A stretch of 64,000 nucleotides of DNA. It comes from Haliotis rubra (lineage: Eukaryota). The stretch lies in the NCBI RefSeq assembly GCF_003918875.1, contig NW_025765163.1, forward strand, positions 62,001-126,000, written 5' to 3'. The notes under the pieces were generated by a model. That model had not been told where the DNA came from, ran no database searches, and saw only the letters and a program-made list of their open reading frames with translations. This document shows, in pieces, positions 8,554-44,578 of this stretch; position 1 is the first letter of the stretch, and every line of letters begins with the position of its first letter. A program made the position numbers and the translations under genes.

Positions 8554-10992
8554 ATGGTGTTGACTTGGATTCTGTTGATCTGTGTATCATTTAAAGTGGG
8601 GAGTAATGGTAGGTATACATGTACATATTACTTATATACACATTTGCAGATGGTTTCTTTTTTAACGCTGACACATTCATATAATTAATTGGCACGCTAT
8701 GTACAAACAGATTTGAGCAAATTCAGATTCTACATAAGAAATGAAAACTACTTGCTTGAACCATTGTTGTTTCAGGGGCTGTTGATGATATTTGCCATCA
8801 TATTCAAAGCTGTTGTTTGGATGAGGACAAACTCTGTCAAACTGACATATCGTCAGATATATGCAAAGTCAACTGCGGTAAATATCATGACTGTTCCTCA
8901 AATCACGTTCGACTTTCGAGAGTGGGGACTGAATGTCAAAACTATTGTACAACTGACCTTGAAAAATGCAATGTCGAATGTATGACTGGTTATTACGGTA
9001 GCAAATGCCATTTTGGGTGCAGTGATAGATGTGTCCAGCGAAAGTGCCACAAAGATAATGGCACTTGCAACTTTGGATGCAAGAGAGGCAGCTTTGGACA
9101 GACATGTGGTTCCACATGTAACCCTAACTGCAAGGATAGAACATGTCACAGGGGTAACGGAAGCTGCCTTCGTGGGTGTTCAGCTGGCTATTACGGTGCA
9201 GATTGTCTAAATAAATGTCCAACATCATGTCGGTATCGAGTCTGCGATGTGGAGAATGGGGACTGTCTTTTCGGATGCACTGAGGGGTTCTATGGGTCTG
9301 ACTGTCCACATTCTTGCCCAGACGATTGCTCTCTGTGTCATCCTGAAACTGGAAAATGCATCTTTGGTAGGTAAACCTCTGTAATATCTTTGGTAGGGAA
9401 ACCTCTGTAACATCTTTGGCAGGTAAACCTCTGTAACATTTTTGGCAGGTAAACCTCTGTAACATCTTTTGTAGGGAAACCTCTGGTAGAGAAACCCCTG
9501 TAACATCTTTTGGTAGTGAAACCTCTGTAATATCTTTGGTAGGGAAACATCTGTAACATGTTTGGTAAGGAAACCTCTGTTATATCTTTGGTAGGAAACA
9601 TCTGTTATATCTTTGGTAGGGAAACATCTGTAACATCTTTGGTAAGGAAACCTCTTTAGCATCTTTGGTTGGTAAACGTCTGTAACATCTTTGGTGGGGA
9701 AACCTCTGCAACATCTTTTGTAATAGGAATATATCATGGAATCAATCAGCACTTTGTGATTGATGATCAAACATCGTACCTTGTGTTTAATTCGCGAAGT
9801 CCCATTGTTGATTAAAGGTTCTGCATACACTTGTGGATAATGACAATAGCTCAATGTTTACTTCTGTTTTGTTTAAGAACACATTCCCGTGATCGAGGGT
9901 ATGTCTTGCACCACGAAGATGCTCGTTGTCTTTTGGGGGTCGGCAGGGGCATTCCTCCTCCTTGCTGGAGCGGCAGTGTGCATGTACAGGTAACTATTGC
10001 TTTATGCAGCATTTGCATTTGTCATGAAATCAGTTGGATCACTGTGTGATCATACCCTTCAATACCTCATTTAGATATTATTTACCATTCTATCACTGTA
10101 CTGATCCGAATTCCATTAAGATGAAATGTATTGTTTTTCCTACTCGTGACTTGAGACCTTCCGCTCAACCACAGTCAGTCCTGTTTAACTTATGCTATGT
10201 ATCAATCTAACCGTACGATTGCAATATATTGTAATGAGCTGATGTCCAAAATCTTATTATATTAGTTTAAAAAATGAACAGGTTGTCAGTCCGTCTTGGT
10301 ATATTTAGCATAACATAATATATTTTGTGTTTATTCACCACAGGAGTCAAGCTTGTAGTTTCAGTCTCAAGAAAAAGAAGAAAGGATTAGACACGCTGTT
10401 CATAGATGATAGAGCGCCAATGGACATTCCGAATAAATCCAGCCAGGACACCAGATCCAGCCACTATGAAGAAATCCTGTGTAGTGATGCAGACAGTCAC
10501 TTTCAGCATATCAGTAAAAGTACAGGCAGTATAAACCTGAGGACCTTGATCAGCACCATGAAGTACCCCAACCAATGCAGCAACTCCAAGCGTAAACGCA
10601 CCAGGGCCGATGCCGGGAGGAACGCTACGTCCCTGGTATCATCTGTACACACGCTCAACAATATTCCCTCGTTCTGGGTAGGATCGGAGACGGATGTTAA
10701 TGAAATGTCGGAACATCCTAATAAGGAGGAAGAACCTCTTGAAAAATCCCATCAAGCTTCCCAGAGGGAAGTCGTACGGTTTTCTGATGCCCTGGGTGGT
10801 GATGAAGCAGAAGGTTTGGATACATCATTGAAAGGAACGGAGGGAGAAAGCAAGTCAGAGTGTGACGATGTGTCAAGTGAGGACCATGGCAAGAGAGTCT
10901 ACATCTCCGCTATTTTCAATAAAAAGGATGACGCTACGATGGTCCATGTCCCATGTGATGGAATATATCCGGGACTGAAAAAGACAGACTAA
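8554..10992 (+). CDS. Gene B: type I membrane multi-EGF receptor with Tyr-motif tail, about 468 aa; exons 8554-8608, 8776-9366, 9878-9989, 10344-10992
   Basis: Signal MVLTWILLICVSFKVGSN. Cys-rich/EGF-like exon. TM MLVVFWGSAGAFLLLAGAAVCMY followed by a KKKKK basic patch. Tail carries SHYEEI, VYISAIF and IYPGL. Phases 1,1,2; 1407 nt in frame. Confidence 0.9.
9360..9720. repeat. About 26-bp minisatellite (atctttggtagggaaacctctgtaac), about 14 copies, starting inside the gene B exon-intron junction
   Basis: The unit recurs at 9360, 9386, 9412 and onward. The first unit contains the donor tttg|gtaggt. Confidence 0.95.
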
Positions 10993-12318: not shown

Positions 12319-12830
12319 CTGAAACGAAAGACAGAAAACACGGATTAATAGGCAATAGCGAAAGCCAGTTGATGAGCGCCATTTGTTTCCGTTTCTATAC
12401 ACGTATACCTAATGGTACAAAGTGTTTGGTGTGATCTGCATCTGTGTTGAATTGATTTCCCGTGTCCGATGTGTTAAACGTGACGTGTGTGTACGTGACC
12501 GGAGAGAAAATATCTCCTTCCCTGAATGTGGAAGTAAGCTACATGGTTTAATTATATGCTTTAAGCATGCCGACTGTTGAACTCGCGAATACAAGGGACA
12601 AATCCTATTCCACATCCATAAGATATCTCAATGGTGCGATTTCAAGCTGTATGGTGACTGTGTGATTATGAATGACTGTCAGATAGTGATGATACCAGGG
12701 GTAGACGTCTCATGCAGCCTATGGGTACCCGTCAGAATCACATTAACAGAACAGCAACAAATTGGGAATATGTGGTACACGTCGGAATAGAGTATGAATA
12801 CTCAATGGCATTTAAAACGTGGCCAAATCT

Positions 12831-13030
12831 GAGTAAGTGTGTTTAGTTTTACGCCGCACTCCGCAATATTCCAGCTATATGGCGGCGGTCTGTAAATAGT
12901 CGAGTCTGGACCAGACAATCCAGTGATCAACAGCATGAGCATCGATCTGCGCAATTGGGATAGGAAGACATGTGTCAACCAAGTCGGCGAGCCTGACCAC
13001 CCGAAGGTGCCTCCCGACAACCCGATCCTC
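12831..13030 (-). mobile_element. Family-1 retroposon, 5'-truncated
   Basis: High identity to the 21666-21940 body in reverse orientation. Confidence 0.8.
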
Positions 13031-17248: not shown

Positions 17249-18611
17249 TAAGGCAAGTGAGTGTTCATAATTGTCTTTGTTCATCCAGCAGAAAATGGGT
17301 ACCCGATGGGATAAGTCATGTGACTACAACTTTCTAGCACCTACCAGGCAGCTTGGGTTAACCGGGGTAATAATGTGTTAGCGTCAAGAGCATGCTTACG
17401 AGCGTGGATATAAATATGCAGCATATGCGCCTGGCGATATTTCCTGACATCACGGTGTCACTTACCACTGGGGAGCACTGGTTTCAGGACCAGTCACAAG
17501 CACTGACCTCATGTTTGTACATGATTCATAAACATTCATCAGCATGGCGAAAATGAAACTAAATATATGACTTAATATAACTACCAATGCAAGGCACACG
17601 CTCTGACGACTATTTCCAGACATGAGAAACTGTACTCTCCCCAAAAAGAAACGCATGTGTATTTTCACGAATGTGATCTGCTAACACTAAAGTGAGATAA
17701 CACGTGTAATTCTGGATCAGTTGCAGCCAGAATACACAGTATTGAAGATCAAATGTCTGTTAACACTCCCTCTGGAGATCAATGATCGGAACCATGTGAA
17801 TCCTTAGGATTTCGTCTCTGTACCGAATAGCGGCTAAATTGCCCTGAAACGCACAAAGTGAAATTTCTGCGTGTAGTATATGTCGCCCCACATCAGACAC
17901 CGCCATAGCAGTCAACCTGGGTACCACAATTCTGTGCCTTCGAACGTAAACGTACATTAAAATTTCGGAAGATAACAAGCTAGCTAGACATACGTTTTAT
18001 ATTAAGATCCTAATCCCCGGCCCATGACCTACTAAATTAAATAAGACAAATTGAACTATAGAAATTCTAGTAAAACTAAAGCGAATGCGGACAAGTATCT
18101 TTCGAAACAGAACATTATATGTGATCAAATAATTTATGAATTATTTACAGTGGAAAATTGTTTCCTTTCAAAGCATGAGGTAATGAAAACGACAGATCAG
18201 GCAAACTTGGAGAAGGTAGGATGTGTGTTATAACATGGACCGAAAAGAATCATATGATACTTGTTTAACATCGAAGTCCTAACACTGAGTGTGTTTATAT
18301 AGATGTAAGATTCCTCAACATCTTGAGCCATGTGTTGTCCTATGTAGTGGTTATGTCTACTTGCAAGTTATTGTGTAAGTGTTTTGTATCCACTTTAACA
18401 GGAGCTTGATTGGGATTCCGTGGATCTGTGTATTTGTTTTTCCACGAGATGAAAATATACGTCAGCATTTACATGTCACTCTATTTCAAGTGGAAAATAT
18501 CGACGTTATACTCCAGTCACACTGAAAAGTATTGTTGTCACTTATGAATAACGTTTATATCTTCTCAACTATCCAGATGCATTACATTACTTTGATTTTG
18601 TTTAAGGAGCC

Positions 18612-21223
18612 ATGAATGACAGCGGGAATAGTCGGACACAGACACAGTCGCCTGTCCAGAATATCACAGTTGTCCCTCAACACGTTTCAGGTAGGGATGT
18701 TAGGAACGTCACTTAAACAGTGACTAAATGAGTATGGTTTTACGCCGCTTTGAGCAACATTCAAGCAATAGTGAGTGATTGAGTTTAGTTTTACGCCGCA
18801 CTCAGAAATATTCCAGCTATATGGCGGCGATCTATAAATAATCGAGTCTGGACTACACTAGATAATCCAGTGACCAACAGCATGAGCACGCAATTGGGAT
18901 ACGATGACACATGTCAACTAAGTCAGCAATCCTGACCACCCGATCCCTTTAGTCGCCTCTTACAGGTTACTGAAGATCAATTCTGATCCGTATCTTCACG
19001 GGTATTCCAGCAATATCACGGCGAGGGACTCGAAGAAGTGGGTTCACACATTGTACCCAAGTGGAGAATCGTACCGGAACTCAGGCAGCACGGGCGAATG
19101 CTTTGACCACCAGGCTACCCCACCGATCAACGTGAACTGAATTGTTTTAGCAATAGGTTGAAGCGGCGCCGTAAGTGCTGCTGGATATGACTATTATGGT
19201 ACCAAATGTCAGTGTAGTGTGAATGTGAAGTCACTTAATTAGGTCCACACATGTATTGACACTTCTACTGGTGGACTTTGGCTTTGCTTGGCAACTTGTT
19301 GTAGCTTGGCCACGGCTCTTTTGAGTCCGCTGCTCCATTGTCAGCAGACGAGTTCCTCCAGCTCCATGTCCAGCTCCTAGAAGTCTCACTCCAGACGTCT
19401 TTTCAGCAGACCTGGGTGCACTTTAGGAGAAGGGAACTGTCGTGGATCCTTCGGGATCATCCAATCCTCTACGCAAAAGACGAAGCTAAGGCGGCGTTGT
19501 TGGAGCAGGTGGACGAGCAGGGAGAGGAGAACGTCAATGTTGGGACTTTGTCATGACATCTTATTCCGACGGCGCGATTCAGCATGCGCATGTGTAACGA
19601 TGACGTCCTTTCCTTGTTTGTAGGGCAAGCCTCTCTGTCGCACAGCAATTTCCTGACAACGCCCAAAGTGTTGGTCACATTGACTCTTGTTTTTATTATT
19701 ATAGGATATTTATGTAGCGCACATATCCACACAACTAATACATGCTCAAGGCACCGGTATTTTCCACCTTGATCATTGGATGTCAATCTCACCGGCACAT
19801 CGTGGAGCATACAACTCTTGCCCATCCTTACGAGGTAAACATTCACAGCTGGGTGGACCGGGACACATAGCCACAGTACTTTGTCCCAAGTTGCTGTACA
19901 CGCAAGTGCTGTACACGCAACTAGGTGTTTGCACGTATACATGTGGCCACCATCTGGTCATATACCAACGGATTCGTGGGTTCTTTTGAATTTTTAGTAC
20001 ACGGGGTTGTGTACTGTATACTAGGGGTTGTGTACTGTACACTAGGGGTTGTGTACTGTACACTATGGGTTGTGTACTGTACACCAGGGGTTGTGTACTG
20101 TACACTAGGGGTGTGACAACACTGAAACAGCCGGCACACAAAGTTGACTCCAAGGTTTTTTACACCCGGTCACAGGTGGGCTCGTTCCCGACACGTCAAG
20201 CTGGCTGGATCAGAAGCCTGGCGCCTTAGACGGCTCGCCCATCATGCCCCACACTGACGGAACACTGACGAGGGCGATGAACGCTCTGCCGGTCCGCTTG
20301 TTGAATTAAAGAACAGGTTGTCCTTGACGGTGGAGCCGTGGTTTTGCGTGACTATTCGCTGAATCAGTTTTGGTATGTTTCAGAAGCCACACATTCCTGC
20401 ACAGCAGAGATACTCGCCGTGTTTTGGGGGTCTGCTGCAGTGTTCCTCCTACTTGCAGGAGCTGCGGTTATCATGTACAGGTAAGTTGGACCAATGTACA
20501 GTACCACTGTATGAAGATTCAATTCACATTCTAATCTTAGTCATTTGTAGTCACGTTCCTTCCCATGGATTATAACGTACTGAATATATGTTTACAGGTA
20601 TGTGTGTATCTTATACTAACCATGAACATTATTGTTCTAACAGAAATGGAATGTTTTCTTCCGCTGGGAAAAAGAAGAAAAGGGGATTAGATACACTGTT
20701 CGTACTCGAAGACACGCCAGCTCCTATACAACCTCCGGCCCGTCAGGAGTGGAGGTTAAGCACCTATGCTGACGTCATGAGTACTGACACCGCCAGTCAC
20801 TACCGTCGTATCAGCAGAAGTATGGGCAGTATCAACTTCAGACGGTTTAACGGCACCATGAAGGGTTCAACCTTGTACAATACTACAAGAAGCAAAATGA
20901 ACACACAAGCCGCTGTGGACATTACTATTTCAGTGGCGCCCCCAGACTTTAAAATATATAAACAGTCATCATATTGGTTAGGTACGGAGACGGATTTTGA
21001 TGACGTGTACGAATGTTTGCCAAAGAAAAGGGCAACACCTAGCAGATACCATGGAGGTCTGCGGCAAGATATTGTTCCGGAACCAGACGAAGAGGATGCA
21101 CCCTCAGAGGAACCACAAGGAGCCACTGGGATTCAACCTCAAAGGGAGACAAGGCATGTGCCGAGCAAATTTCTTTACATCTCCCCTGTGTTTAACGCTG
21201 GAAATGAACAATCAAACATATGA
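18612..21223 (+). CDS. Gene C: EGF-less single-pass membrane adaptor-like paralogue of gene B, about 251 aa; exons 18612-18690, 20384-20480, 20644-21223
   Basis: gccATG MNDSGNSRTQTQSPVQNITVVPQHVS|EATHSCTAEILAVFWGSAAVFLLLAGAAVIMYR|NGMFSSAGKKKKRGLDTLF... TM and tail blocks are clearly homologous to B; 756 nt in frame. TM and tail exons are solid; the first exon is less certain. Confidence 0.75.
18728..19126 (-). mobile_element. Family-3 tRNA-SINE with a family-1 retroposon (18771-19003) inserted in it
   Basis: The outer element matches 14890-15045; the inner one is flanked by the duplication attc(a/c)agcaata. Confidence 0.8.
19690..20250 (-). mobile_element. tRNA-derived SINE (family 4, CORE-like centre, (ATA)n tail) with an internal 21-bp tandem expansion at about 20000-20110
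   Basis: Minus strand ggggcatgatgggcgagccgtctaaggcgc..., central cttgggacaaagtact...gtccacccagctgtgaatg, tail gcgctacataaatatcctataataata. Second copy at about 37796-38280. Confidence 0.75.
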
Positions 21224-21665
21224 GAACACTCTGATGAATATAATTCCTTAATTGAGGACATAAGAACAGTGTATGGAACTGTCTGTAGTCACTGTGTATA
21301 AATGTCTTCATTTGTCAGCGTGATATTTATTGTGCATATGCTCTCTTAATTTGTTGTTTAATGCCGCACTCAGCAGTATTCAAGCTCTGTGATAGTGAGC
21401 TGTAAATAATCTTGTCTAGATTATACAAGCCAGTGATTGATATGATAGGCTTCGATTCATGTAACCAAGACATGCATGAGGCGTGTCTGATCACCCGAAC
21501 CCGATCTGAATGGGAAACGAATGTCATTTCGAGTGGCTATTTACTATTTACCAATTCAAACCTATGAGGGTATGTTGAATTATATGTTGGCAACCTGTCT
21601 GCCCTCGTGGGTGGATGTAGGCATACAAAATGTCAATATACCTCATGTATGTTCAGATCCATATT

Positions 21666-21940
21666 GACCCGTGAAGATCCGGGATAGAACAGGTCTTCAG
21701 CAACCCATGTGCTTGCCATAAAAGGCGACTATGCTTGTCGTAAGAGGCGACTAACGGGATCGGGTGGTCAGGCACGCTGACTTGGTTGACACATGTCATC
21801 GGTTCCCAATTGCGCAGATCGATGCTCATGCTGTTGATCACTGGATTGTCTGGTCCAGACTCGATTATTTACAGACGGCCGCCATATAGCTGGGATATTG
21901 CGGAGTGCGGCGTAAAACTAAAACTCACTCACTCACTCAC
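21666..21940 (+). mobile_element. Full-length family-1 retroposon, 13-bp TSD, (ACTC)n tail
   Basis: TSD tcagatccatatt at 21653-21665 and 21941-21953. Other copies at about 21340-21510, 25420-25636, 35490-35720, 40890-41120, 48363-48481, 51074-51286, 51431-51575 and 56700-56760. Confidence 0.9.
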
Positions 21941-22750
21941 TCAGATCCATATTAATATGATCGTGTAATTAGAATAATCATGTAATAATATACTTTAATA
22001 TATATTGTTGGATGTACGTCGGTAGGAATCAGACTATGTTTGGCATGATTTCACATTTCTTTAGATATCAACATAACCCCCTTTCTGTTGTAGAGAGGCT
22101 ACACTGTTTCACATTAAACCTAATTCCAATGTCAATATTCCATGGATGGTTAACGTCTTTTGCTCATCACTGTATATGTTGCTGATACGATAAGAGTATT
22201 TTTATGAACAAGATGAACAAATGGGTGCGTTGAATGAGTCCAACCATTTCAATAACTGCATTTACACCTCTGTTCATGCGGACATATGTTCAACACATAT
22301 TACGTTTCCATTATGTCATAATCATAACAAAACTATAATTATTATACAATACTATTAGCCTATGGTAGCTAACATGTACACGTCTTAGTCTCTTCCATTA
22401 AAGTTTCAGTACCTACTATGACTTACGTGTTCGTCAGTGCCACGTTTAATTTCGACTTCATGAACGCACCAGTTAACAAGATACCTACCAACTGAGTGAG
22501 AATCAGCAATACGTGAGTTAAGACCAATCCTCACACTAGTTTACTTGTGAGACCTGCACAGACCTCCGCTGCCTGGGATTCACCTACCACACAAAGCTAT
22601 GTATACAGCATGTGATCTAACGGCATACTGAAACTGGCCTGACTTTACACTGGCATGTACCATTTAAAATTACAAAAGGAAGCTACGTGTATGGCAGGTT
22701 CAGGATTTACTTCGCGTGACCAACGAACCGCTAAAATGATTCTCCCACAT

Positions 22751-25312: not shown

Positions 25313-27383
25313 ATGATGGGGTCATGGTGGGTGCACATACTTATTCTGGTGAGCAAAATATTATTTGGTTGTTCTTGTCATTTGTAGTTTATCTTAAGAT
25401 ATACATGTAGATATACGTGGGAGTTTGTTTTTGTTGCTTAACGCCGAACATAGCAATAAATCAGCAATATGATGTCTGTCAGTGAATAATCGATCCGACA
25501 ATCCAGTGATTAACATTAAGAGCATCGTTTAACGCAACGGGAATACGATGACATATATCAGTATATATGGACTATGACTGCATCCCATTGTTGTACAGTT
25601 GTTGAAGACCAGTTGTAACCCGGATCTTCATGGGGGTGTTGGAGGTCAGATGGCGTATTTGTTTGTCTTCCTATCTGTCGCCATGTTTTACTCCGATAGT
25701 TATCACATCATGGCTTTATTTCTTCAGATTAAACAATCGTATATGTGATTTTTTCAGAGCACCGGACTGATATTCGGAACTATTTCACAAACAAGTGAGT
25801 GTAACGTCATTTACAATCTCATGTGCTGTCTTCACTATCATTCACAATGAAGCCTTCATAAACGTTGTTGAGCAATGAACATTTATATGTTGTTTCATTA
25901 AAAGTAAGTGGTATCTGCACATGTGTTATTACAGGTGGTTCCTGCAACGAGAGATGTTCCTACTGTCTTGGAACAAAGTGTCGGGAATGTCTCTACGGCT
26001 GGTATGGACGAGACTGTAATGACAAATGCAGTGAGTATTGCTGGCATGGTGGATGTGAGAGGATAACAGGACGTTGTTATCAGTGTGTTCCTGGAAGACA
26101 CTCAGGTGACTGTACCCAACTCTGCTCTCATCACTGCAGTGAGAATAGCAACGGACAGGTCAACTGTGACATAACGACTGGAAACTGTTTGGAGGATTGC
26201 GTGGAAGGAAGGTGGGGTCCACGATGCCAGTATAGATGTCCAGACAACTGCAAAGAAGACCTTTGCTACAAAGAGGATGGAGGGTGTCTGAGAGGCTGCG
26301 TTGATGGATTTCATGGTTCCATGTGTAAAGATCAGTGCTCCGAAGGTTGTTTGAACTCCACATGCCAATGGTTCACTGGCAAATGTACACATGGATGTAA
26401 GAACGGTTACCTTGGCTCCACGTGTTTGTACCCAATGGCCAGACACTGCCTCAACCAGGCTTACTATGCCGAACACCATACCGTGGCGTGTACTGATGGG
26501 TGTGACGATGGTTACACTTCAGAAACATGTAACGAAACATGTAACACTGGGTGTCTTAAATGTCACCAGTATTCAAAGACATGTTTGTCATGTATCTCCG
26601 GATTGTATGGCGACAAATGCCAAATCGAATGCAGTATGACATGCAATGAGTTGAACTGTGACATGTCAGGTGGATGTGACAAAGGGTGTACCCCGGGTTT
26701 CCGCGGTGTATATTGTAATGACACCTGTCCATACAACTGTTTGTCATGTAGTCAGCATACCGAGACGTGTACAGATTGTAAGGTGGGATATACTGGCCCT
26801 GAGTGTACGGAGGTGGACACATACAACGCGCTGGACGTCACAGGTAATGTTGCTACATGTATATACTGAAACATAAACTGGTAATAAACCACAGGAATGA
26901 GGCCGACATAAATGTGACTAATAGCAATATTTTTTTAACCCAAAAAGCCAGATATGCATTAATATTGTTGATGTATTCGGAGAGTATGGTGGGTTCACAG
27001 CATGAATTACCTGACAGTGTGTAATTTCGTCCAGATTAACGCATATCCATAGCATAAACTAATCGTTGTTTTAGAGTAACACCATTTGCAAACACCTCTA
27101 ACCTGCGTCCGGTTTAATGAGGTTTAACTTTTTCATGCCCTTTCGTAACATGCCTTTTTCAGTATTACTAAGCAATACATTAAATGTCATGAATAGTCAC
27201 ATGTTCTTGATAGTACTCACACCATGTGAAAATCGCACATTGCTCTCCACAACAGTTGAAATGTATGTTCACGTTCAGTCAGTGCCTGTTGCTTTTTCAG
27301 ACACAGTGTCACACAACGAGGCCTGCATCTTGCTAACACTAATAATGTGTACCGTAGCGCTCATCAGACATCCCGGTATATAA
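25313..27383 (+). CDS. Gene D: multi-EGF protein with GPI-signal-like C-terminus, about 354 aa; exons 25313-25348, 25758-25794, 25935-26843, 27301-27383
   Basis: Signal MMGSWWVHILIL|STGLIFGTISQT. 909-nt EGF exon. Terminal exon DTVSHNEACILLTLIMCTVALIRHPGI*. Phases 0,1,1; 1065 nt in frame. Confidence 0.88.
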
Positions 27384-29111: not shown

Positions 29112-30017
29112 TGTGGTGAGCCAGATAAAGGTATCTGTGTAGTTGGTTCTTTATCATGATTGTTGCAGTGTTTAACTTACATTGTCGTTGTGCGATTTTA
29201 AAATGTGTATTTATGAGATTCTGCTCATGGACAGCTTCCTATTGCATACTGTGATATACTCTAGTTTACAGCTGCAACTCGTTTAACTGCGTTATCCTCT
29301 GTAGAATACAGCTGTCCGACACATTTACTATGATGTACTGAGTACAGTACAGCTGCCATACAATGTACTGTGGTATATTCTAGTTTACAGCTGCCACACA
29401 ATGCTGTCCGACATATTTACTGTGATGTACTACAACTGCCTCACAATGAATGATACTCTGCTGAATGACCACTTGATGGATGAAATGATCTTATAATTGT
29501 CAGGGACAATATGCTGGACCTGGATACATTATAACATTCTGTCATAGCAACGGATTCAGGACAACTGTTGTACAAATAATTCCAAAGACCAAAAACCATG
29601 TATGACTTAATTGCAACTACTTATATGACGTTAACCTCCGTTCGTAATCCTCACCACCACTGTATTCCTGACTTGTCAGCCAGCCCTTGCTACATTGTCA
29701 TTTTCATCAACCTTAGTTGGCCACACCTTTGGCCGTGTTTGCCATCACATCATTGTCTCTTTATCTGTCCATTGTTGTTTCTTCGTCTGTACATTGTTCC
29801 TTTTGAATATCTGTTTATGTTTCCACCTATTCCGACTGCCTGTGTAAGGACGACCATGAGCAGGATGTGCCACTGGTAGGAAACTGTAGGTTGAGCTGGA
29901 ACCACCCACTGCTGTATTTGTGTGTTGCTTCTATAGCCAATAAAGAGGTTTGTATTTCCTCGTCTATCTCATCATCTTATTTTGTTGCTCTAGTTTGTAT
30001 TTTCCGGCTTACACACA
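29112..30017 (+). mobile_element. Putative solo LTR
   Basis: TG...CA ends with short inverted termini (tgtggtgagcc / ggcttacacaca) and AATAAA about 75 nt from the end. Its 3' part is repeated at 36097-36228. No clear TSD. Confidence 0.45.
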
Positions 30018-32821: not shown

Positions 32822-34852
32822 ATGACGGAGCAATGGTGCTTTGTTGCCGCAATGGTAAGAAAAATTGATTGATTTACATTGATATTTCACTACAACCAAT
32901 ATATCAACAAAAGCACTCTGTGATTCTGTCCCAGGATTCTGGTTAGAATATATGTTTCCGAGTATAGTTCTGATATATCATATTATATGCAGATGTTTTA
33001 ACACTAATGTGACTCTTATGTTCACATAATAATGTATAGTTATGCATTTTTCATTCCAGTGTTTCAGTTTTGTGTTTGGATTTACTTTGGAACATGGAAG
33101 TAAGTATAACTTCAATGTATGGGTCATGCAATTGCTGCAAGGAAAGGTTGTACCTCATGATAACATGCAAGACATACTCCTTCGACATACTTGCATTTCG
33201 TAACGAAATGTAGTAACGTGTTCACTTGTTTTGTTGTACTGTGTGCTTGTACTCGGGACAAATAACACGGGAGTAGGTCAGTTTAAGGTGAAGGTCACAT
33301 CTGCAGCACCTCAGCTGTATAGCGAGGGACACAACACGTAACTATATTCTGCGTATAAGTGTCGCTCTATCTGAGATTTACTCTGGGCCATTGGTTCGTT
33401 GTGGAGTGGTATGTGCACTTTGTGCTGCCTGTGGACCGCCACAATAATTGACTGTTCCCAAAAAACAGAGAACGATCTGGGGAAAAGGTGCACACTTTTA
33501 TCAAAGGCATATATGTATATGCATATGTATTACAGGTGGCTCATGCAACGAGAGATGTTTATACTGCCAGGGAACAAAGTGTCGGGAATGTCTCTACGGC
33601 TGGTATGGACGACACTGTAATGACAAATGCAGTGAGTATTGCTGGCATGGTGGATGTGAGAGGATAACAGGACGTTGTCACCAGTGTGTTCCTGGAAGAC
33701 ACTCAGGTGATTGTACCCAACTCTGCTCTCATCACTGCAGGGAGAATAGCAACGGACAGGTCAACTGTGACATAACGACTGGAAACTGTTTGGAGGATTG
33801 CGTGGAAGGAAGGTGGGGTCCACGATGCCAGTATAGATGTCCTGCCAACTGCAAAGAAAATCTTTGCTACAAAGAGGATGGAGTGTGTCTGAGAGGCTGC
33901 GTTGATAGATTTCATGGCTTCATGTGTAAAAGTCAGTGTTCAGAAAGTTGTTGGAACTCCACATGCCAATGGTTAAATGGGAAATGTACACATGGATGTA
34001 AAACAGGTTATACTGGCTCAAAATGTTCCAATCCACGCACAAGACACTGTATGGATCCTGAATCCTATTTCATAGACGACCAGACATTGGTGTGTGAAGG
34101 TGGATGTAAGCCTGGTTGGACCGCGGCACACTGTGGAGACACTTGCACGGAGAGGTGTGAGATATGTCACCAGTTTGACAAAACATGCCAGCAGTGTCAG
34201 CCCGGATTTTATGGAGTAGCATGTCAACTTGAATGTGGCATGAACTGCAATCAAACACACTGTGACATGTCAGGTCGATGTGACAAAGGCTGTATGGGTG
34301 GCTTCCGCGGGGAATATTGCAACGAAACCTGTCCGTTCAACTGTTTAACGTGCAGTCAATGGCAAAATACATGTACACTCTGTAAACAAGGCTATACCGG
34401 TGACCAGTGCCTTGAGACCACCATTCCTGAAGTTGACCCCGCTACAGGTACCTCCCTATTGATCATCAAGTCATGATAAAAGACATCATATATTCTTTGG
34501 TTTAATATCCATGTGATCTGTGCCACAAATAGTACATATACTGTGCATTAACAACTTATATGTTTACTTCATCACATTGACAAGACCAATGCGATTATGT
34601 CGATGTCATTTGACACCATTTAGATCACAGGTACATTGTGCTATGAAATGAAATGAAATCTGACATGAATAAGGTTATATTTATTGATGGTTCGTGATAT
34701 GTTTTAAATATAAATGGCCAGACTGTTGGTACCAATATCGACACTGCTAACTGATACTTTGGGTTGTTGTTTCAGACGAGGGCGTGCACACACAGCCGAA
34801 CATCCAGACAGTACTGCTCCTTGTTTCTGTAGCTCGTATTATCAAAACCTGA
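32822..34852 (+). CDS. Gene E: multi-EGF protein with GPI-signal-like C-terminus, about 353 aa; exons 32822-32854, 33060-33099, 33536-34447, 34776-34852
   Basis: Signal MTEQWCFVAAM|CFSFVFGFTLEHG. 912-nt EGF exon. Terminal exon DEGVHTQPNIQTVLLLVSVARIIKT*. 1062 nt in frame; AATAAA near 35323. Confidence 0.9.
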
Positions 34853-37473: not shown

Positions 37474-40033
37474 ATGACGGAGCAATGGTGCTTTGTTGTT
37501 ACAATGGTAAGAAAAATGAATTTAATCACTACAACCAATATAACAACAAAAACACACTGTGATTCTGTCCCCGGATTCTGGTTAGAATATATGTTTCCGG
37601 GTATAGTTCTGATATATCATATTATATGCAGATGTTTTAACACTAATGTGACTCTTATGTTTACATAATAATGTATATTTATGCATTTTTCATTCCAGTG
37701 TTTCAGTTTTGTGTCTGGATTTACTTTGGAACATGGAAGTAAGTATAGCTTCAATGGTCATACGATTGCTGCAAGTAAAAGTTGTACCTCATGATTATTA
37801 TTATGCTATCATTAATAAAGCGGCGATATCCAGCTCAGCTGCTCAAAGGTGCTTTGTTTTCCCTCGATCACTGGATGTCAATGTCAACGACACGTCGTAT
37901 TATCAATCTCAACTCCCTGGGCGCACCGTGTTAGTGTGGCTTTCAAATCCTTACGAGGTACCCATTCAGAGCAGGATGGACTGGGACACATAGTCACAGT
38001 ACTTTGTCAAGTTTACTGCACGTTGCTGTACCCGCAACTAGTTGTTTGCACGTATTCATGTGGCCACCATCTGGTCATATACCAACAGATTCGTGGGTTT
38101 CTTTTAAGTGCACGGGGTTGAGTACTATACACTAGGAGGATTGTGACAACACTGAAAGAGTCTGAACACAAAGTTGACTCCAAGGTTTGTACACCCGGTA
38201 ACAGATTGGCTCGATCCCGTCACCTCAAGCTCGCTGGATCACTAGCCTGGCGCCTTAGCCAGTTCGCCCACCATGCCCCCATAATAACAAGCAAGACATA
38301 CGTCTTCGACATACTTGCATTTCGTAATGAAATGTAGAAACGGTTTTGATTATTTTGTTGTAATGTGGTTGTACTCGGAACAGATAACACGCTAAGGGAG
38401 TGAGTCAGTTTAACGTTAAGGTCACATCTGCAGCACCCAGCCGTATAGCGAGGGACACAATACGTAATAGTATGACTCTATAATGTATGTTTGCAGTATT
38501 GTAATCAACAACTACATTCCGCGTATTAGTATCGCTCTATCTTAGATTTACTTATCCACCGGAGCCATGGGTTCATAGTGGAGTGGTATGTGCAAAGAGT
38601 AAGTTGTTTACTCGTACTCTATGTGCTGTCTGTGGACCACAATAATTGACTGTTCCCAAAAAACAGAGACCGATTGGGGAAAAGGTGCACACTTTTACAA
38701 AAGGCATATATGTATATGCATATGTATTACAGGTGGTTCCTGCAACGAGAGATGTTCCTACTGTCTTGGAACAAAGTGTCGGGAATGTCACTACGGCTGG
38801 TATGGACGACACTGTAATGACAAATGCAGTGAGTATTGCTGGCATGGTGGATGTGAGAGGATAACAGGACGTTGTCACCAGTGTGTTCCTGGAAGACACT
38901 CAGGTGACTGTACCCAACTCTGCTCTCATCACTGCAGGGAGAATAGCAACGGACAGGTCAACTGTGACATAACGACTGGAAACTGTTTGGAGGATTGCGT
39001 GGAAGGAAGGTGGGGTCCACGATGCCAGTATAGATGTCCAGCCAACTGCAAAGTAGAACTTTGCTACAAAGAGGATGGAGGGTGTCTGAGAGGCTGCGTT
39101 GATAGATTTCATGGTTCCATGTGTAAAGATCAGTGCTCCGAAGGTTGTTTGAACTCCACATGCCAATGGTTCACTGCCAAATGTACACATGGATGTAAAA
39201 CAGGTTATACTGGCTCAAAATGTTCCAATCCACGCACAAGACACTGTATGGATCCTGAATCCTATTACATAGACGAACAGTCATTGGTGTGTGAAGGTGG
39301 ATGTAAGCCTGGTTGGACCGCGGCACACTGTGAAGACACTTGCCGGGAGAGGTGTGAGACATGTCACCAGTTTGACAAAACATGCCAGCAGTGTCAGCCC
39401 GGTTTTTATGGAGAAGCATGTCAACTTGAATGTGGCATGAACTGCAATCAAACACACTGTGACATGTCAGGTCGATGTGACAAAGGCTGTATGGGTGGCT
39501 TCCGCGGGGAATATTGCAACGAAACCTGTCCGTTCAACTGTTTAACGTGCAGTCAATGGCAAAGTACATGTACATTCTGTAAACAAGGCTATACCGGTGA
39601 CCAGTGCCTTGAGACCACCATTCCTGAAGTTGACCCCGCTACAGGTACTTTTCCTATTGATCATCAGTCATGATAAAAGGCATTATATATTCTTTGGTTT
39701 AGCAGTCATGTGGCCTGTCCCACAAATGTAACGTATACTATGCATTAACAACTTATATGTTTACTTCATCACATTGACAAGACCAGTTAGATTATGTCTA
39801 TGTAATTTGATACCACTGACTTTTTAGATCACAGGTTCAATGTGCTATGAAATGAAGTGAAATCTGAGATAAATAAGGTTTGATATCTTTGACATATAAA
39901 TGGCCAGACTAACCAACATCGATACTGCTAACTGATACTTTTGGTTGTTGTTTCAGACGAGGGCGTGCACATACTGCCGAACATCCAGACAGCTTTGCTC
40001 CTTGTTTCTGTAGCTCGTATTATCAAAACCTGA
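37474..40033 (+). CDS. Gene F: tandem duplicate of E, about 353 aa; exons 37474-37506, 37699-37738, 38733-39644, 39957-40033
   Basis: Same exon lengths as E. Terminal exon DEGVHILPNIQTALLLVSVARIIKT*. The acceptor before the ATG exon reads ttttctg instead of ttttcag. Confidence 0.88.
37796..38280 (-). mobile_element. Family-4 SINE inserted in a gene F intron (absent from E)
   Basis: Homologous to 19690-20250. E has the uninterrupted site tacctcatgataacatgcaagacatac at about 33151-33177. Confidence 0.8.
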
Positions 40034-42327: not shown

Positions 42328-44578
42328 ATGTGGAATGTTTACAGCGGACCGACTTTTCTGATACTCCTCATCAGTGGATATATCGGTGGTAAGTGAAGGG
42401 GTTGCAACATTCGTGTTGAAGATTTAGAAGTTTATAAGCGATCGGGTATACATTTGAAACTGATTGTAACCCATTCATTCAAATTGATACAAGACCACAA
42501 AAAGTAAATTGTTTCCAGAAAATGGGCTTGTTTACAGTCATTCTCGATTGTAATCAGTAGGCCAAATGTGAGGTCTTTGCAACTGTAACCAGTTTTACTG
42601 AAGTTGTATGACTTTTTAATTACAGAGGCCTCTGATGAATGTAGTTATGTACAGCGGTGTAAAGACGAGGTCTGTGATGGAGCTGGCTGCACAAAGGGCT
42701 GCAAGGATGGTTACTACGGCCCCAGTGTAGATATAACTGCACTGGTAACTGCATGAACAATCGCTGCAATGAGTCTGCATTTGGTGGAGCATCTTGTATA
42801 GATGGATGCAAAGACGGCTTTTGGGGTGAGAAATGCACCTCTAAGTGTCCCCACGTTTGTAAGCGATGCAACAATGACGCTTCATGCAGCGAATGTGACG
42901 GCTTCCATTACGGACCCATGTGTACGGCAGACTGCAGGGGAACATGTTCTGTGTCTGGTTGCCACAGCAACGGGACATGCAGGCAAGGCAATCACACGAT
43001 GTCTCCATGTGGCTCTAACTGCATCTTCTGTAACGTCTCCAGTGGCATCTGCACGCGCTGCAGAAGAACCTACGCTGGGGAGAAATGCGACGTATATTGC
43101 GGAAACTGTGCCGGAAGTTGTTCTGTTGATGGATGTTTAGAAGGATGCTCACCAGGTCACCGGGGACCGTACTGTGAAGATAGCTGCAGCGAAAGGTGTT
43201 CTGGGAATATCTGTGATCAGGAATCCGGGGAATGTTTGAAAGGGTGTCACAATGGATATCACGATCCCGATTGTTCCAAAATATGCCCAAGTCGTTGTAT
43301 ACGGGATATCTGTCATCAACGTTCAGGACAATGCAAACACGGCTGCCAGAATGGACATTACGGACCCTCGTGTAAACGGATTTGTGAAAACTGTTTTGAT
43401 GAGACATGCAATCGCAGCACCGGCCGATGTGTGTACGGATGCAGTGACGGGAGGTATGGGCTGGACTGTAACCAAGAATGCAGCCAGCTGTGTCAGTCTG
43501 GGAGATGCCGGAGGGAAGATGGGGCGTGTTTGATAGGGGACGGCATCAGTAAGTTCATTTGTGTATATTATTGTAATAATTGTGCTTGTATTAACATATT
43601 ATCAGGGAATGTAATAGACAACTGTAGATGACAAAATGAAAGTATCCAGGACACACAGATGATGAACGCTGTATGTTTCTACGTTTCTCCCCAATTAGCA
43701 ACCGCGACATGTCATCATCTTCTACTCGTATTTTCGTAAATGTAGGTTTCAATTTCAGATTTAAATTCAAAAACGAGATCTAACTATAGGTTTTCCTTTT
43801 GCAGATTCTACCCCAAAACCATCCTTGGGAAAAGAAGCAGTCCGTACCAATGTGTATTTAATACTCGCCTCAGTGGGGATATTCTTGCTATGTGTAGTGG
43901 CAGCGGGGATACTGATGATAAGGTACATGATAATAGGAGTGGACAACACTATGAGAAGATGATTTCCACTTTGTTAATGACCTGTTATTAAACAATACTA
44001 TTATCAAATGGAAAAAGTTCGCAAATGATTCTGATAAAAGCATTGATCGTCTCTATTGTAACAATTCCGTGTTTGTCAAGTGGGGACCTAACGGAACACT
44101 TTACTGTTATTCCTATTGCAACAGGTTCTGCCGATCTCCCTGTCTGACGAGACTGAACAGGACCAATCCTCCACCGTCAAGAGGATCACTACCAGGCCCC
44201 CCACCTCTACAGCCCAGCAGCAACATGTACAGTGTAATATACGAAGACCAAATGGACTCAAGTGCCCAGTCCCTGAGAAGTAACACCTTAACTCGGCCTG
44301 CCCTTGTGCTTCCCATGTCGAACATTGTGTCCCCGTCTAAAGACGAGCCAGAGGAGTGCGTGTTCTCAACCCCTGGGGAGGTTCTCCAAATACCCTCGTC
44401 TTCTGACAAACCGGCATCGGAATATCCTGAACAACCCAACCTCTGTGCGTCTCCAGAACCTGACAGTTCCACCTACGAAAGTCTCTCTAGTGGGCCCCAC
44501 AGCCCACACAAACAGAGAACTGTTCCTCGTTCCTATATCACTCCGGTCTCTGATGACCATCAACCTCAGCTGTCATAA
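42328..44578 (+). CDS. Gene G: type I membrane multi-EGF receptor with Pro/Ser-rich Tyr-motif tail; exons 42328-42388, 42626-43548, 43805-43922, 44125-44578; one -1 frameshift at about 42720-42723 (assembly error or null allele)
   Basis: Signal MWNVYSGPTFLILLISGYIG. The EGF exon reads through if one C is added (ggc ccc [c]ag tgt = GPQC). TM VYLILASVGIFLLCVVAAGILMI. Tail carries NMYSVI, STYESL and SYITPV. Confidence 0.85.

What the first reader, a model, noticed from the sequence alone, without database searches (positions are those of the whole stretch)
20765..20812. ITAM-like tandem intact in C but Tyr-to-Phe disabled in B
Seen: C has YADV-x8-YRRI; the aligned B sequence (10465-10512) is YEEI-x8-FQHI. 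Established: ITAM is YxxL/I-x6-8-YxxL/I, ITIM is S/I/V/LxYxxI/V/L, and pYEEI is the optimal Src SH2 ligand. C's first half ends in V, so the ITAM match is imperfect, and each half also fits the ITIM consensus. Inference: B and C recruit different SH2 effectors, possibly an activating/inhibitory pair.
Basis: partly seen in the sequence, partly recalled or inferred. Interest (0 to 1): 0.7.

Follow-up and report, generated by a model that had tools for sequence, protein, structure and literature searches.

The report
Abalone receptor tails: tandem-tyrosine motif
Two neighbouring abalone genes (an EGF-repeat receptor and a short adaptor-like copy without the EGF region) share a cytoplasmic tail in which the copy has two tyrosines spaced like an immune-receptor ITAM and the receptor has Tyr then Phe; the difference is real and fixed across the genus, but the motif fails the strict ITAM rule and no signalling role is shown.

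Summary
Window 20765-20812 encodes YADVMSTDTASHYRRI and 10465-10512 encodes YEEILCSDADSHFQHI. Both lie in frame in the last exon, about 40 residues after a transmembrane exon.

The window is abalone (Haliotis). B is a roughly 460-aa receptor with EGF-like repeats, whose H. rufescens orthologue NCBI names PEAR1-like. C is a roughly 220-aa transmembrane protein without EGF repeats (orthologue models 251-301 aa).

All five C-type sequences keep both tyrosines, and all five B-type sequences keep Tyr then Phe.

- The strict ITAM rule is not met. The +3 residue of the first half is V in four C-type sequences and G in one.
- "Disabled in B" assumes a direction of change that cannot be set. The tail family was found only in Haliotis, so there is no outgroup.
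- The Y/F position sits in a block conserved in both paralogues, and in C it is followed by RR (an RRxS pattern).
- Conservation is tail-wide. Seven of eight C tyrosines are invariant and dN/dS is about 0.4.
- C has no ligand-binding ectodomain, so a classical activating/inhibitory receptor pair does not fit.

The first motif also differs in a fixed way (YEEI in B, YA[D/E]V in C), so different SH2 partners remain plausible but untested. Other first-stage notes on this same window (s1-333072, s1-333179) cover gene C and the shared tail blocks; nothing was found on other DNA.

The parts
20765..20812 (+). Gene C tandem motif YADV-x8-YRRI (tail residues 41-56)
   Evidence: Both Tyr are conserved in 5 of 5 C-type sequences.
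10465..10512 (+). Gene B aligned stretch YEEI-x8-FQHI
   Evidence: Conserved as YEEI..FQHI in 5 of 5 B-type sequences.
20644..21223 (+). Gene C last exon: cytoplasmic tail, stop codon included
   Evidence: The acceptor is aacag|A and the join to the TM exon is phase-compatible. It is 61-78% identical to Haliotis C orthologues. dN/dS is 0.41 and 0.39.
20384..20480 (+). Gene C transmembrane exon (..EATHSCTAEILAVFWGSAAVFLLLAGAAVIMY)
   Evidence: dN/dS against the B exon is 0.09 at dS 1.56.
18612..18690 (+). Gene C first coding exon (MNDSGNSRTQTQSPVQNITVVPQHVS), a short ectodomain with no EGF repeats
   Evidence: It matches the N-terminus of H. asinina XP_067678730 (P0001). The same ATG is present in H. 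asinina.
10344..10992 (+). Gene B last exon: cytoplasmic tail, stop codon included
   Evidence: It is 67% identical to the tail of H. rufescens PEAR1-like XP_046327750 (P0006).
9878..9989 (+). Gene B transmembrane exon (EHIPVIEGMSCTTKMLVVFWGSAGAFLLLAGAAVCMY)
8766..9366 (+). Gene B exon of EGF-like repeats (34 Cys); the 5' boundary is approximate
8554..8604 (+). Gene B signal-peptide exon (MVLTWILLICVSFKVGS); the 3' boundary is approximate
   Evidence: weak tblastn match to the N-terminus of P0006. A counterpart is present in H. asinina.

Best explanation
B and C are tandem paralogues known only from Haliotis. They share a strongly constrained transmembrane helix and a cytoplasmic tail predicted with low confidence, which fits disorder, built from short conserved blocks. 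B keeps an ectodomain of EGF-like repeats and is the receptor. C has lost it and is a short-ectodomain transmembrane adaptor-like protein.

Shown: the membrane-proximal tyrosine is invariant in all ten sequences. I infer that it is the likeliest phosphorylation-dependent docking site. Its +1 to +3 residues are fixed differently in the two paralogues: YEEI in B (the Src-family SH2 optimum) and YA[D/E]V in C (closer to Csk- or SHP-type YxxV sites). I infer that the two tails select different SH2 partners already at this first site.

The second position, twelve residues on, is an aromatic inside a block shared by both paralogues: H-[Y/F]-x-x-[I/V]-S-[K/R]-S-x-G-S-I-N-[F/L]-R. It is Phe in every B and Tyr in every C. 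The block itself does not depend on tyrosine phosphorylation, because B maintains it with Phe under purifying selection.

In C the Tyr may add a second phosphotyrosine with ITAM-like spacing. That would make C a non-canonical ITAM-like adaptor. It remains a candidate, not a demonstrated ITAM.
For: -
- Orthologues were found in H. asinina, H. rufescens, H. cracherodii and two Logan contigs, with Y/Y in all C and Y/F in all B.
- Across all ten sequences the first Tyr, the His before the second aromatic and S.S.GSIN.R are invariant.
- Both tails are under purifying selection: dN/dS is 0.41 for C, 0.50 for B, and 0.39 for C at dS 0.56.
- AlphaFold2 predicts only the TM helix, with tail pLDDT about 30. 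That is consistent with a disordered carrier of linear motifs.
- No Pfam or PDB relative was found.
- ITAM-Syk signalling has been shown experimentally in a mollusc (oyster CgIgR-CgSyk, PMC6994640).
- In the EGF-repeat engulfment receptor Draper, Y-to-F changes in the ITAM abolish Shark binding (PMC6219719).
- PAG shows that short-ectodomain adaptors with several YxxV/L/I sites and ITAM-like pairs exist (PMC2213442).
- The statement that pYEEI is the Src SH2 optimum is established knowledge, not tested here.
Against: - There is no phosphorylation, binding or expression evidence. No RNA run holding the locus was found.
- The motif window is not unusually conserved: 11 of 16 columns are invariant, and 66 of 186 windows do as well or better.
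- Seven of eight Tyr in C are invariant, so conservation of these two is not specific.
- The basic RR at +1 and +2 of the second Tyr is a poor context for acidophilic Src- or Syk-type kinases (from general knowledge). Together with the following Ser it forms an RRxS basophilic Ser-kinase pattern.
- In one species the first motif reads YADG, so the +3 hydrophobic residue is not strictly required.
- All sequences come from one genus at modest divergence.
Confidence: 0.45

Rival explanations
1. True ITAM, which is the core of the reader's reading. The C tandem YA[D/E]V-x8-YRR[I/V] is phosphorylated on both tyrosines and recruits a Syk/Shark-type tandem-SH2 kinase. B, with Phe at the second site, cannot do this.
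For: - The spacing of 8 is within the ITAM range, and both Tyr are conserved in 5 of 5 C-type sequences.
- The loose pattern is found in only 1.5% of shuffles.
- Draper, an EGF-repeat receptor, uses an ITAM with relaxed spacing, and Y-to-F kills Shark binding (PMC6219719).
- ITAM-Syk signalling exists in molluscs (PMC6994640).
Against: - The +3 residue of the first half is never L or I: it is V in four and G in one. The second half has V in three of five.
- There is no conserved acidic residue upstream.
- RR follows the second Tyr.
- The second-site block is equally conserved in B with Phe.
- The same loose pattern arises by chance in non-coding ORFs of this window.
Confidence: 0.25
2. Classical activating/inhibitory paired receptors. 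B and C sense the same ligand and send opposite signals, one through an ITAM and the other through an ITIM.
For: - They are tandem paralogues with fixed differences in their tyrosine motifs.
- The first half of each fits the loose ITIM pattern S-x-Y-x-x-[I/V] in most sequences.
Against: - C has no EGF ectodomain. It has only about 35 poorly conserved residues and a single Cys, so it cannot be a ligand-matched partner.
- Both tails are long and share most of their blocks.
- The ITIM -2 residue of the second half is not conserved: S, C, C, C, Y.
Confidence: 0.07
3. Receptor plus signalling chain. C is a disulfide-linked partner chain of B or of other receptors in the cluster, in the manner of DAP12, FcR-gamma or CD3-zeta. 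The tandem tyrosines of C carry the signal for a B-C complex.
For: - The juxtamembrane Cys is conserved in both. B ectodomains have an odd number of Cys (35) and C has exactly one.
- The residue at the outer TM edge is K in all B (CTTK) and E in all C (CTAE).
- The TM exon is under very strong constraint between the paralogues, with dN/dS 0.09 at saturated dS and unalignable intron flanks, so this is not gene conversion.
- The helix is rich in small-xxx-small patterns.
Against: - The charged residues lie at the membrane edge, not inside the helix as in DAP12-type pairs.
- There is no co-expression or interaction data.
- B has a full tail of its own, unlike receptors that rely on adaptor chains.
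- The H. asinina B copy carries an in-frame stop in its tail while C is intact.
Confidence: 0.18
4. No tyrosine-based function. The pattern is a chance arrangement of residues in a conserved tail, and both aromatics serve non-phospho roles such as packing or docking, or lie within a Ser-phosphorylation block.
For: - Y and F are the most conservative exchange, and B keeps F across the genus.
- Conservation is tail-wide.
- The chance background for the pattern is not negligible.
- The RRxS and SxSxGS context suggests Ser phosphorylation.
Against: - The first Tyr is invariant in all ten sequences. In B it sits in the textbook Src SH2 ligand YEEI in 5 of 5.
- Tyr residues are kept more often than average columns in C: 7 of 8 against 52% of all columns.
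Confidence: 0.2

Closest known systems
Draper / CED-1 / MEGF10 / PEAR1 engulfment and adhesion receptors
   Same: B is a single-pass receptor with many Cys-rich EGF-like repeats (CxxGxxGxxC spacing). Its tail carries tyrosine motifs. NCBI names the H. rufescens orthologue PEAR1-like. Draper signals through a relaxed ITAM plus Src42A and Shark (PMC6219719).
   Different: There is no NPxY in the B or C tail. The tail has no detectable similarity to any protein outside Haliotis. No Pfam EGF or EMI model is matched by B or its orthologue. B has Tyr then Phe, not an ITAM.
ITAM signalling chains (DAP12, FcR-gamma, CD3-zeta, Ig-alpha/beta)
   Same: C has a very short ectodomain with one Cys next to the membrane and an acidic residue at the TM edge. 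It has two tyrosines 12 residues apart.
   Different: The motif is not YxxL/I in the first half. The C tail is about 190 residues long with six further tyrosines. The acidic residue is at the helix edge, not in its core. C is derived from its neighbouring receptor rather than being an unrelated chain, and there is no sequence homology to these chains.
Transmembrane adaptor proteins (PAG/Cbp, LAT, SIT, LIME)
   Same: These have a short ectodomain without a ligand-binding domain and a long tail, presumably disordered, with multiple YxxV/L/I sites. PAG has ITAM-like pairs and a Csk-binding tyrosine (PMC2213442). C also carries a conserved YxN site (LYNT) of the Grb2 type.
   Different: C has no juxtamembrane CxxC palmitoylation motif. 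There is no homology, so this is analogy only. The C partners are unknown.
Oyster CgIgR ITAM receptor
   Same: It is a molluscan membrane receptor whose cytoplasmic tandem-tyrosine motif recruits Syk (PMC6994640).
   Different: CgIgR has a classical D/ExxYxxL-x(6-12)-YxxL motif and Ig domains. The abalone motif is non-canonical and untested.

Membership tests
Canonical ITAM (YxxL/I-x6-8(12)-YxxL/I) | Two tyrosines with 6-8 (up to 12) residues between the halves | tested here: met
   C has 8 residues between YADV and YRRI. The spacing is the same in all five C-type sequences.
Canonical ITAM (YxxL/I-x6-8(12)-YxxL/I) | L or I at +3 of both tyrosines | tested here: not met
   The first half has V in four sequences and G in one, never L or I. 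The second half has I in two and V in three.
Canonical ITAM (YxxL/I-x6-8(12)-YxxL/I) | Located in the cytoplasmic tail of a membrane protein | tested here: met
   A TM exon is followed by a basic KKKKR run, and the motif lies 41-56 residues into the tail exon.
Canonical ITAM (YxxL/I-x6-8(12)-YxxL/I) | Dual phosphorylation and binding of a tandem-SH2 kinase (Syk, ZAP-70 or Shark) | not testable with these tools
   This needs phosphopeptide binding or cell assays.
ITIM ([S/I/V/L]xYxx[I/V/L]) | Consensus residues at -2 and +3, conserved in orthologues | tested here: inconclusive
   C first half: -2 is S in four of five (N in H. cracherodii) and +3 is V in four of five. C second half: -2 is S only in the window species (C, C, C, Y elsewhere). 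B first half: S-H-Y-E-E-I in four sequences and A-Y-Y-E-E-I in H. asinina.
MEGF10/Draper/PEAR1 receptor family (gene B) | N-terminal EMI domain plus multiple EGF or laminin-type EGF repeats recognised by family models | tested here: inconclusive
   The region has 34 Cys with CxxGxxGxxC spacing, and NCBI's name is PEAR1-like. No Pfam model matched the B exon at E up to 1 or its H. rufescens orthologue at E up to 0.1.
MEGF10/Draper/PEAR1 receptor family (gene B) | NPxY (PTB-binding) motif in the tail | tested here: not met
   There is no NPxY in the B or C tail sequences printed.
DAP12/FcR-gamma-type signalling chains (gene C) | Short ectodomain with a Cys for disulfide dimerisation | tested here: met
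   There is a single Cys in the C ectodomain, four residues before the hydrophobic core, in all orthologues. This is a sequence feature only; no disulfide has been shown.
DAP12/FcR-gamma-type signalling chains (gene C) | Acidic residue within the TM helix that pairs with a basic residue of the receptor | tested here: inconclusive
   There is E in all C and K in all B at the same position, but it lies at the outer edge of the helix (CTAE|IL versus CTTK|ML).
DAP12/FcR-gamma-type signalling chains (gene C) | Sequence homology to the family | tested here: not met
   A profile search of 1.84 billion representatives returned only Haliotis B and C types plus two spurious retroelement repeats. Pfam gave only a sub-threshold DUF4605 hit over the TM helix.

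The most novel reading that the evidence does not exclude
C is an independently evolved ITAM-like signalling chain. It arose from its own receptor (B) by tandem duplication and loss of the EGF exon. It pairs with B, or with neighbouring EGF receptors, through the conserved juxtamembrane Cys, the K/E charge pair at the helix edge and the strongly constrained TM helix. On this reading the ligand-binding chain carries a single Src-type YEEI site and the adaptor chain carries the tandem tyrosines. This would be a molluscan analogue of receptor/DAP12 or BCR/Ig-alpha-beta architecture, with its evolutionary origin still visible in the genome.
Probability: 0.13. Interest if true: 0.7.

Novelty: new variant of a known kind. 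Interest (0 to 1): 0.35.

Why it matters
Tyrosine-motif signalling (ITAM, ITIM, transmembrane adaptors) is well mapped in vertebrates and in Drosophila Draper, but it is barely charted in molluscs, whose genomes hold very large expansions of EGF-repeat receptors. This locus offers a clean natural experiment. Two paralogues share the same helix and tail scaffold and differ, consistently across a genus, at exactly the residues that set SH2 specificity: YEEI versus YA[D/E]V, and Phe versus Tyr. If the tyrosines are used, the pair shows how an adaptor-like chain can be born from a receptor. It would also give abalone immunology or cell-clearance studies a concrete handle. If they are not used, the locus is a useful caution that ITAM-like patterns in conserved tails arise easily.

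Tried and rejected
- Read laying on 18500-21400 with runs of three coded organisms showed orthologous DNA contigs: 20290-21379 with 32 differences, and 20369-21384 with 83. All runs were DNA contigs, so there is no splice or expression evidence. No RNA holder was found.
- The word search with the B tail ORF found nothing. This is expected, because full-length B proteins (about 468 aa) fall outside the length band for a 221-aa query. The profile search then recovered them.
- P0007 and P0008 from the profile search are retroelement proteins. A repeated FAYWQGTDSDIEDLV stretch mimics SYWLGTETDFDDVY. I rejected them as unrelated.
- A strict ITAM pattern at 29329 (YDVL-x6-YNVL) looked as if it might be the tail of gene D. 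It lies in a low-complexity ORF with no counterpart in H. asinina or elsewhere in the window, so I took it as chance.
- Pfam, the PDB sequence search and AlphaFold2 gave no domain or fold for the tail.
- The tail of gene G (44069-44578) cannot serve as an outgroup. It shares only the C-terminal YI[S/T]P[V] motif.
- Literature searches for abalone PEAR1-like receptors or abalone Syk found nothing specific.
- Joined (spliced) B or C models of the window were not searched. Exons were searched by reference, and database orthologues were used for full-length work.
Full report
**What is at the coordinates.** Both lie in long ORFs, 20588-21223 and 10327-10992. These two ORFs are homologous to each other and to nothing else in the window (tblastn E about 1e-20, roughly 30% identity).

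**Gene context.** The window is eukaryotic and carries a tandem cluster of genes with large Cys-rich exons of EGF-like repeats. A hydrophobicity scan found one transmembrane exon upstream of each tail.
- In B the exon is 9878-9989 and encodes ..EGMSCTTKMLVVFWGSAGAFLLLAGAAVCMY.
- In C it is 20384-20480 and encodes ..THSCTAEILAVFWGSAAVFLLLAGAAVIMY.
- Both end in AG|GT donors. The codon is completed by the first base of the tail exon, which follows a cag/acag acceptor.
- Each tail opens with R....KKKKxGLDTLF, a basic stop-transfer run.

The motif is therefore cytoplasmic, 41-56 residues into the tail exon.

**Organism and orthologues.** A word search with the C tail ORF returned three proteins:
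- H. asinina XP_067678730 (251 aa, 78% identical)
- H. rufescens LOC124111908 (271 aa, 65%)
- a Logan ORF from run DRR299178

Cluster look-up added a 301-aa H. rufescens isoform and an H. cracherodii protein. These are short proteins consisting of a brief N-terminus, the TM helix and the tail, with no EGF repeats. The window has the matching first coding exon at 18612-18690, which fits the H. asinina N-terminus. This confirms the neighbouring first-stage note (s1-333072) that C lacks EGF repeats.

The B tail ORF found nothing in the word search, because full-length relatives are too long for that tool's length band. A profile of the B and C tails was searched against 1.84 billion representatives and found only five proteins:
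- two C types
- H. rufescens 'platelet endothelial aggregation receptor 1-like' XP_046327750 (468 aa, the B orthologue)
- two retroelement proteins whose repeat mimics one block by chance

Cluster members added H. cracherodii B and a Logan fragment. The syntenic H. asinina locus (L001) holds B, C and D in the same order. Its B tail reads YEEI-x8-FQHI but carries an in-frame stop at the Trp of SFWVGSE, and no gene is called there. Its signal, EGF and TM exons look intact.

**Conservation of the motif.**

| Paralogue | Species or source | Sequence |
|---|---|---|
| C | window | YADV-x8-YRRI |
| C | H. asinina | YAEV-x8-YRRI |
| C | H. rufescens | YADV-x8-YRRV |
| C | H. cracherodii | YADV-x8-YRRV |
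| C | DRR299178 | YADG-x8-YRRV |
| B | window, H. asinina, H. rufescens, H. cracherodii, Logan | YEEI-x8-FQHI in all five |

The Y/F difference predates the split between the lineage of the window species and H. asinina and the North Pacific species.

Three points limit how much this conservation means.
- Across all ten sequences the invariant columns are the first Tyr, the His just before the second aromatic, and S.S.GSIN.R just after it. The second site is therefore part of a block that B maintains with Phe.
- Within C, 7 of 8 tyrosines are invariant, against 52% of all columns. The 16-residue motif window has 11 invariant columns, and 66 of 186 windows do as well or better. The motif is conserved but not exceptionally so.
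- Both tails evolve under moderate purifying selection. dN/dS is 0.41 for C and 0.50 for B against H. asinina, and 0.39 for C at dS 0.56 against DRR299178.

**Chance.** The loose pattern Yxx[LIV]-x6-8-Yxx[LIV] occurs in 1.5% of shuffles of the C tail, and the strict ITAM is absent. In 23,554 aa of stop-to-stop segments of this window, most of them non-coding, the loose pattern appears five more times (at four other places). One of these is a strict ITAM-like YDVL-x6-YNVL at 29329, in a low-complexity ORF with no counterpart elsewhere. With about eight receptor tails in the cluster, the pattern by itself is not significant.

**ITAM and ITIM membership.**
- The spacing and cytoplasmic location fit an ITAM.
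- The L/I rule at +3 fails for the first half in every species. It holds for the second half in only two of five.
- There is no conserved acidic residue upstream.
- The ITIM -2 residue of the second half (S) is specific to the window species.
- The second Tyr is followed by RR. With the next Ser this gives RRxS, a basophilic Ser-kinase pattern. From general knowledge this is a poor context for acidophilic Src or Syk kinases.
- The first half differs between paralogues in a fixed way. YEEI in B is the Src SH2 optimum by established knowledge. YA[D/E]V in C is nearer to the YxxV sites of adaptors such as PAG (PMC2213442).

'B and C recruit different SH2 effectors' is therefore plausible, but it does not hinge on the second tyrosine.

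**'Disabled in B' and 'activating/inhibitory pair'.** The polarity of the Y/F change cannot be set. The tail family was found only in Haliotis, and the tail of gene G shares only a C-terminal YI[S/T]P motif. A classical paired-receptor reading needs two ligand-matched ectodomains. C has about 35 poorly conserved extracellular residues.

**Other anatomy that bears on mechanism.**
- AlphaFold2 on H. asinina C, with the eight-sequence alignment, predicts only the TM helix. Tail pLDDT is about 30, which is consistent with disorder, although the alignment is shallow.
- B ectodomains have 35 Cys, which is 34 in the EGF region plus one next to the membrane. C has that single Cys only.
- Two residues after that Cys, at the outer edge of the helix, every B has K and every C has E.
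- The TM exon is 78% identical between B and C while the tails are about 30% identical. dN/dS is 0.09 at dS 1.56, and the intron flanks do not align. This is long-term selection, not gene conversion.

These features suggest specific helix-helix and disulfide interactions. They motivate the receptor-plus-signalling-chain reading, which I rate at about 0.15-0.2.

**Comparison with known systems.**
- Draper (CED-1/MEGF10 family) signals through YxxI/L-x6-12-YxxI/L, Src42A and Shark, and Y-to-F abolishes Shark binding (PMC6219719).
- Oyster CgIgR shows ITAM-Syk signalling in a mollusc (PMC6994640).
- PAG is a short-ectodomain adaptor with many YxxV/L/I sites and ITAM-like pairs (PMC2213442).

The abalone pair works most like a receptor (B) plus a transmembrane adaptor (C). 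It is not a demonstrable member of any of these families. There is no NPxY, no Pfam or PDB match, no canonical ITAM and no homology outside the genus.

**Verdict.** My best reading, at confidence 0.45, has three parts:
- The invariant first tyrosine is the main candidate phospho-switch, with paralogue-specific SH2 selectivity.
- The second site is a paralogue-fixed Y/F inside a shared, non-pTyr-dependent block.
- In C that site may add a second phosphotyrosine with ITAM-like geometry.

A true Syk-type ITAM is rated about 0.25, no tyrosine function about 0.2, and a classical activating/inhibitory pair below 0.1.

**Constraints observed.**
- Read laying was given 2,901 letters.
- No N run was filled.

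Noticed in passing
window 9904-9984 and 20395-20475: The TM exon of B and C is far more conserved than the tails: 78% against about 30% amino-acid identity, with dN/dS 0.09 at dS 1.56 and unalignable intron flanks. A juxtamembrane Cys is conserved in both. The residue at the outer helix edge is K in every B and E in every C. B ectodomains have an odd Cys count (35) and C has a single Cys.
   Followed up: partly
L001:3264-3266 (H. asinina, syntenic B tail): There is an in-frame stop at the Trp codon of the conserved SFWVGSE block, and no gene is called for B in that assembly. dN/dS after the stop is 0.90 against 0.29 before it. It could be a truncated allele, an early pseudogene or an assembly error.
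   Followed up: partly
window 20801-20821: The second motif of C reads HYRRISRS, an RRxS (PKA-type) pattern conserved in all C orthologues (YRRISRS or YRRVSRS). B has HFQHISKS.
   Followed up: no
window 10900, 21176, 44534: A C-terminal motif Y-I-[S/T]-[P/A]-[V/I] is shared by the tails of B (RVYISAIFN), C (FLYISPVFN) and gene G (RSYITPVSDD). Otherwise the G tail is unrelated. It may be a docking site common to the cluster.
   Followed up: no
window 20876-20887: C has a YxN (Grb2-type) site, STLYNT, that is invariant in all five C-type sequences. The window B has KYPNQ nearby, but that Tyr is His in H. rufescens and H. cracherodii.
   Followed up: no
window 18694-19178, 19664-20245, 21313-21400: Highly repeated elements lie in the introns and flank of C. 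Contig depth sums run to 1e5-1e7 in all four runs. Related ORF fragments (..GLSGPDSIIYRPPPYSW..AECGVKL) recur at 12802-13020, 21786-21968 and 51242-51595, so this is probably a SINE-like family.
   Followed up: no
window 9225-9854: A minisatellite sits in the B intron between the EGF and TM exons. It reads as a long repetitive minus-strand ORF (..RFPYQRCYRGFPTKDVTDV..). The H. asinina counterpart is also repetitive.
   Followed up: no
window 25865-26869, 33448-34476, 38621-39673: There are three near-identical EGF exons (genes D, E and F). Only one counterpart is seen in the H. asinina stretch fetched, which suggests recent local duplication in the window species' lineage.
   Followed up: no
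window 29329-29370: A strict ITAM-like pattern, YDVL-x6-YNVL, lies in a low-complexity and apparently non-coding ORF. It is a useful example of a chance match.
   Followed up: yes
L002:824-1417 (Logan DRR299178): In this C orthologue the first motif reads YADG, with Gly in place of Val at +3, and the residue at -2 of the second Tyr is Tyr (AYHY). It rests on a single contig, so polymorphism or error cannot be excluded.
   Followed up: no
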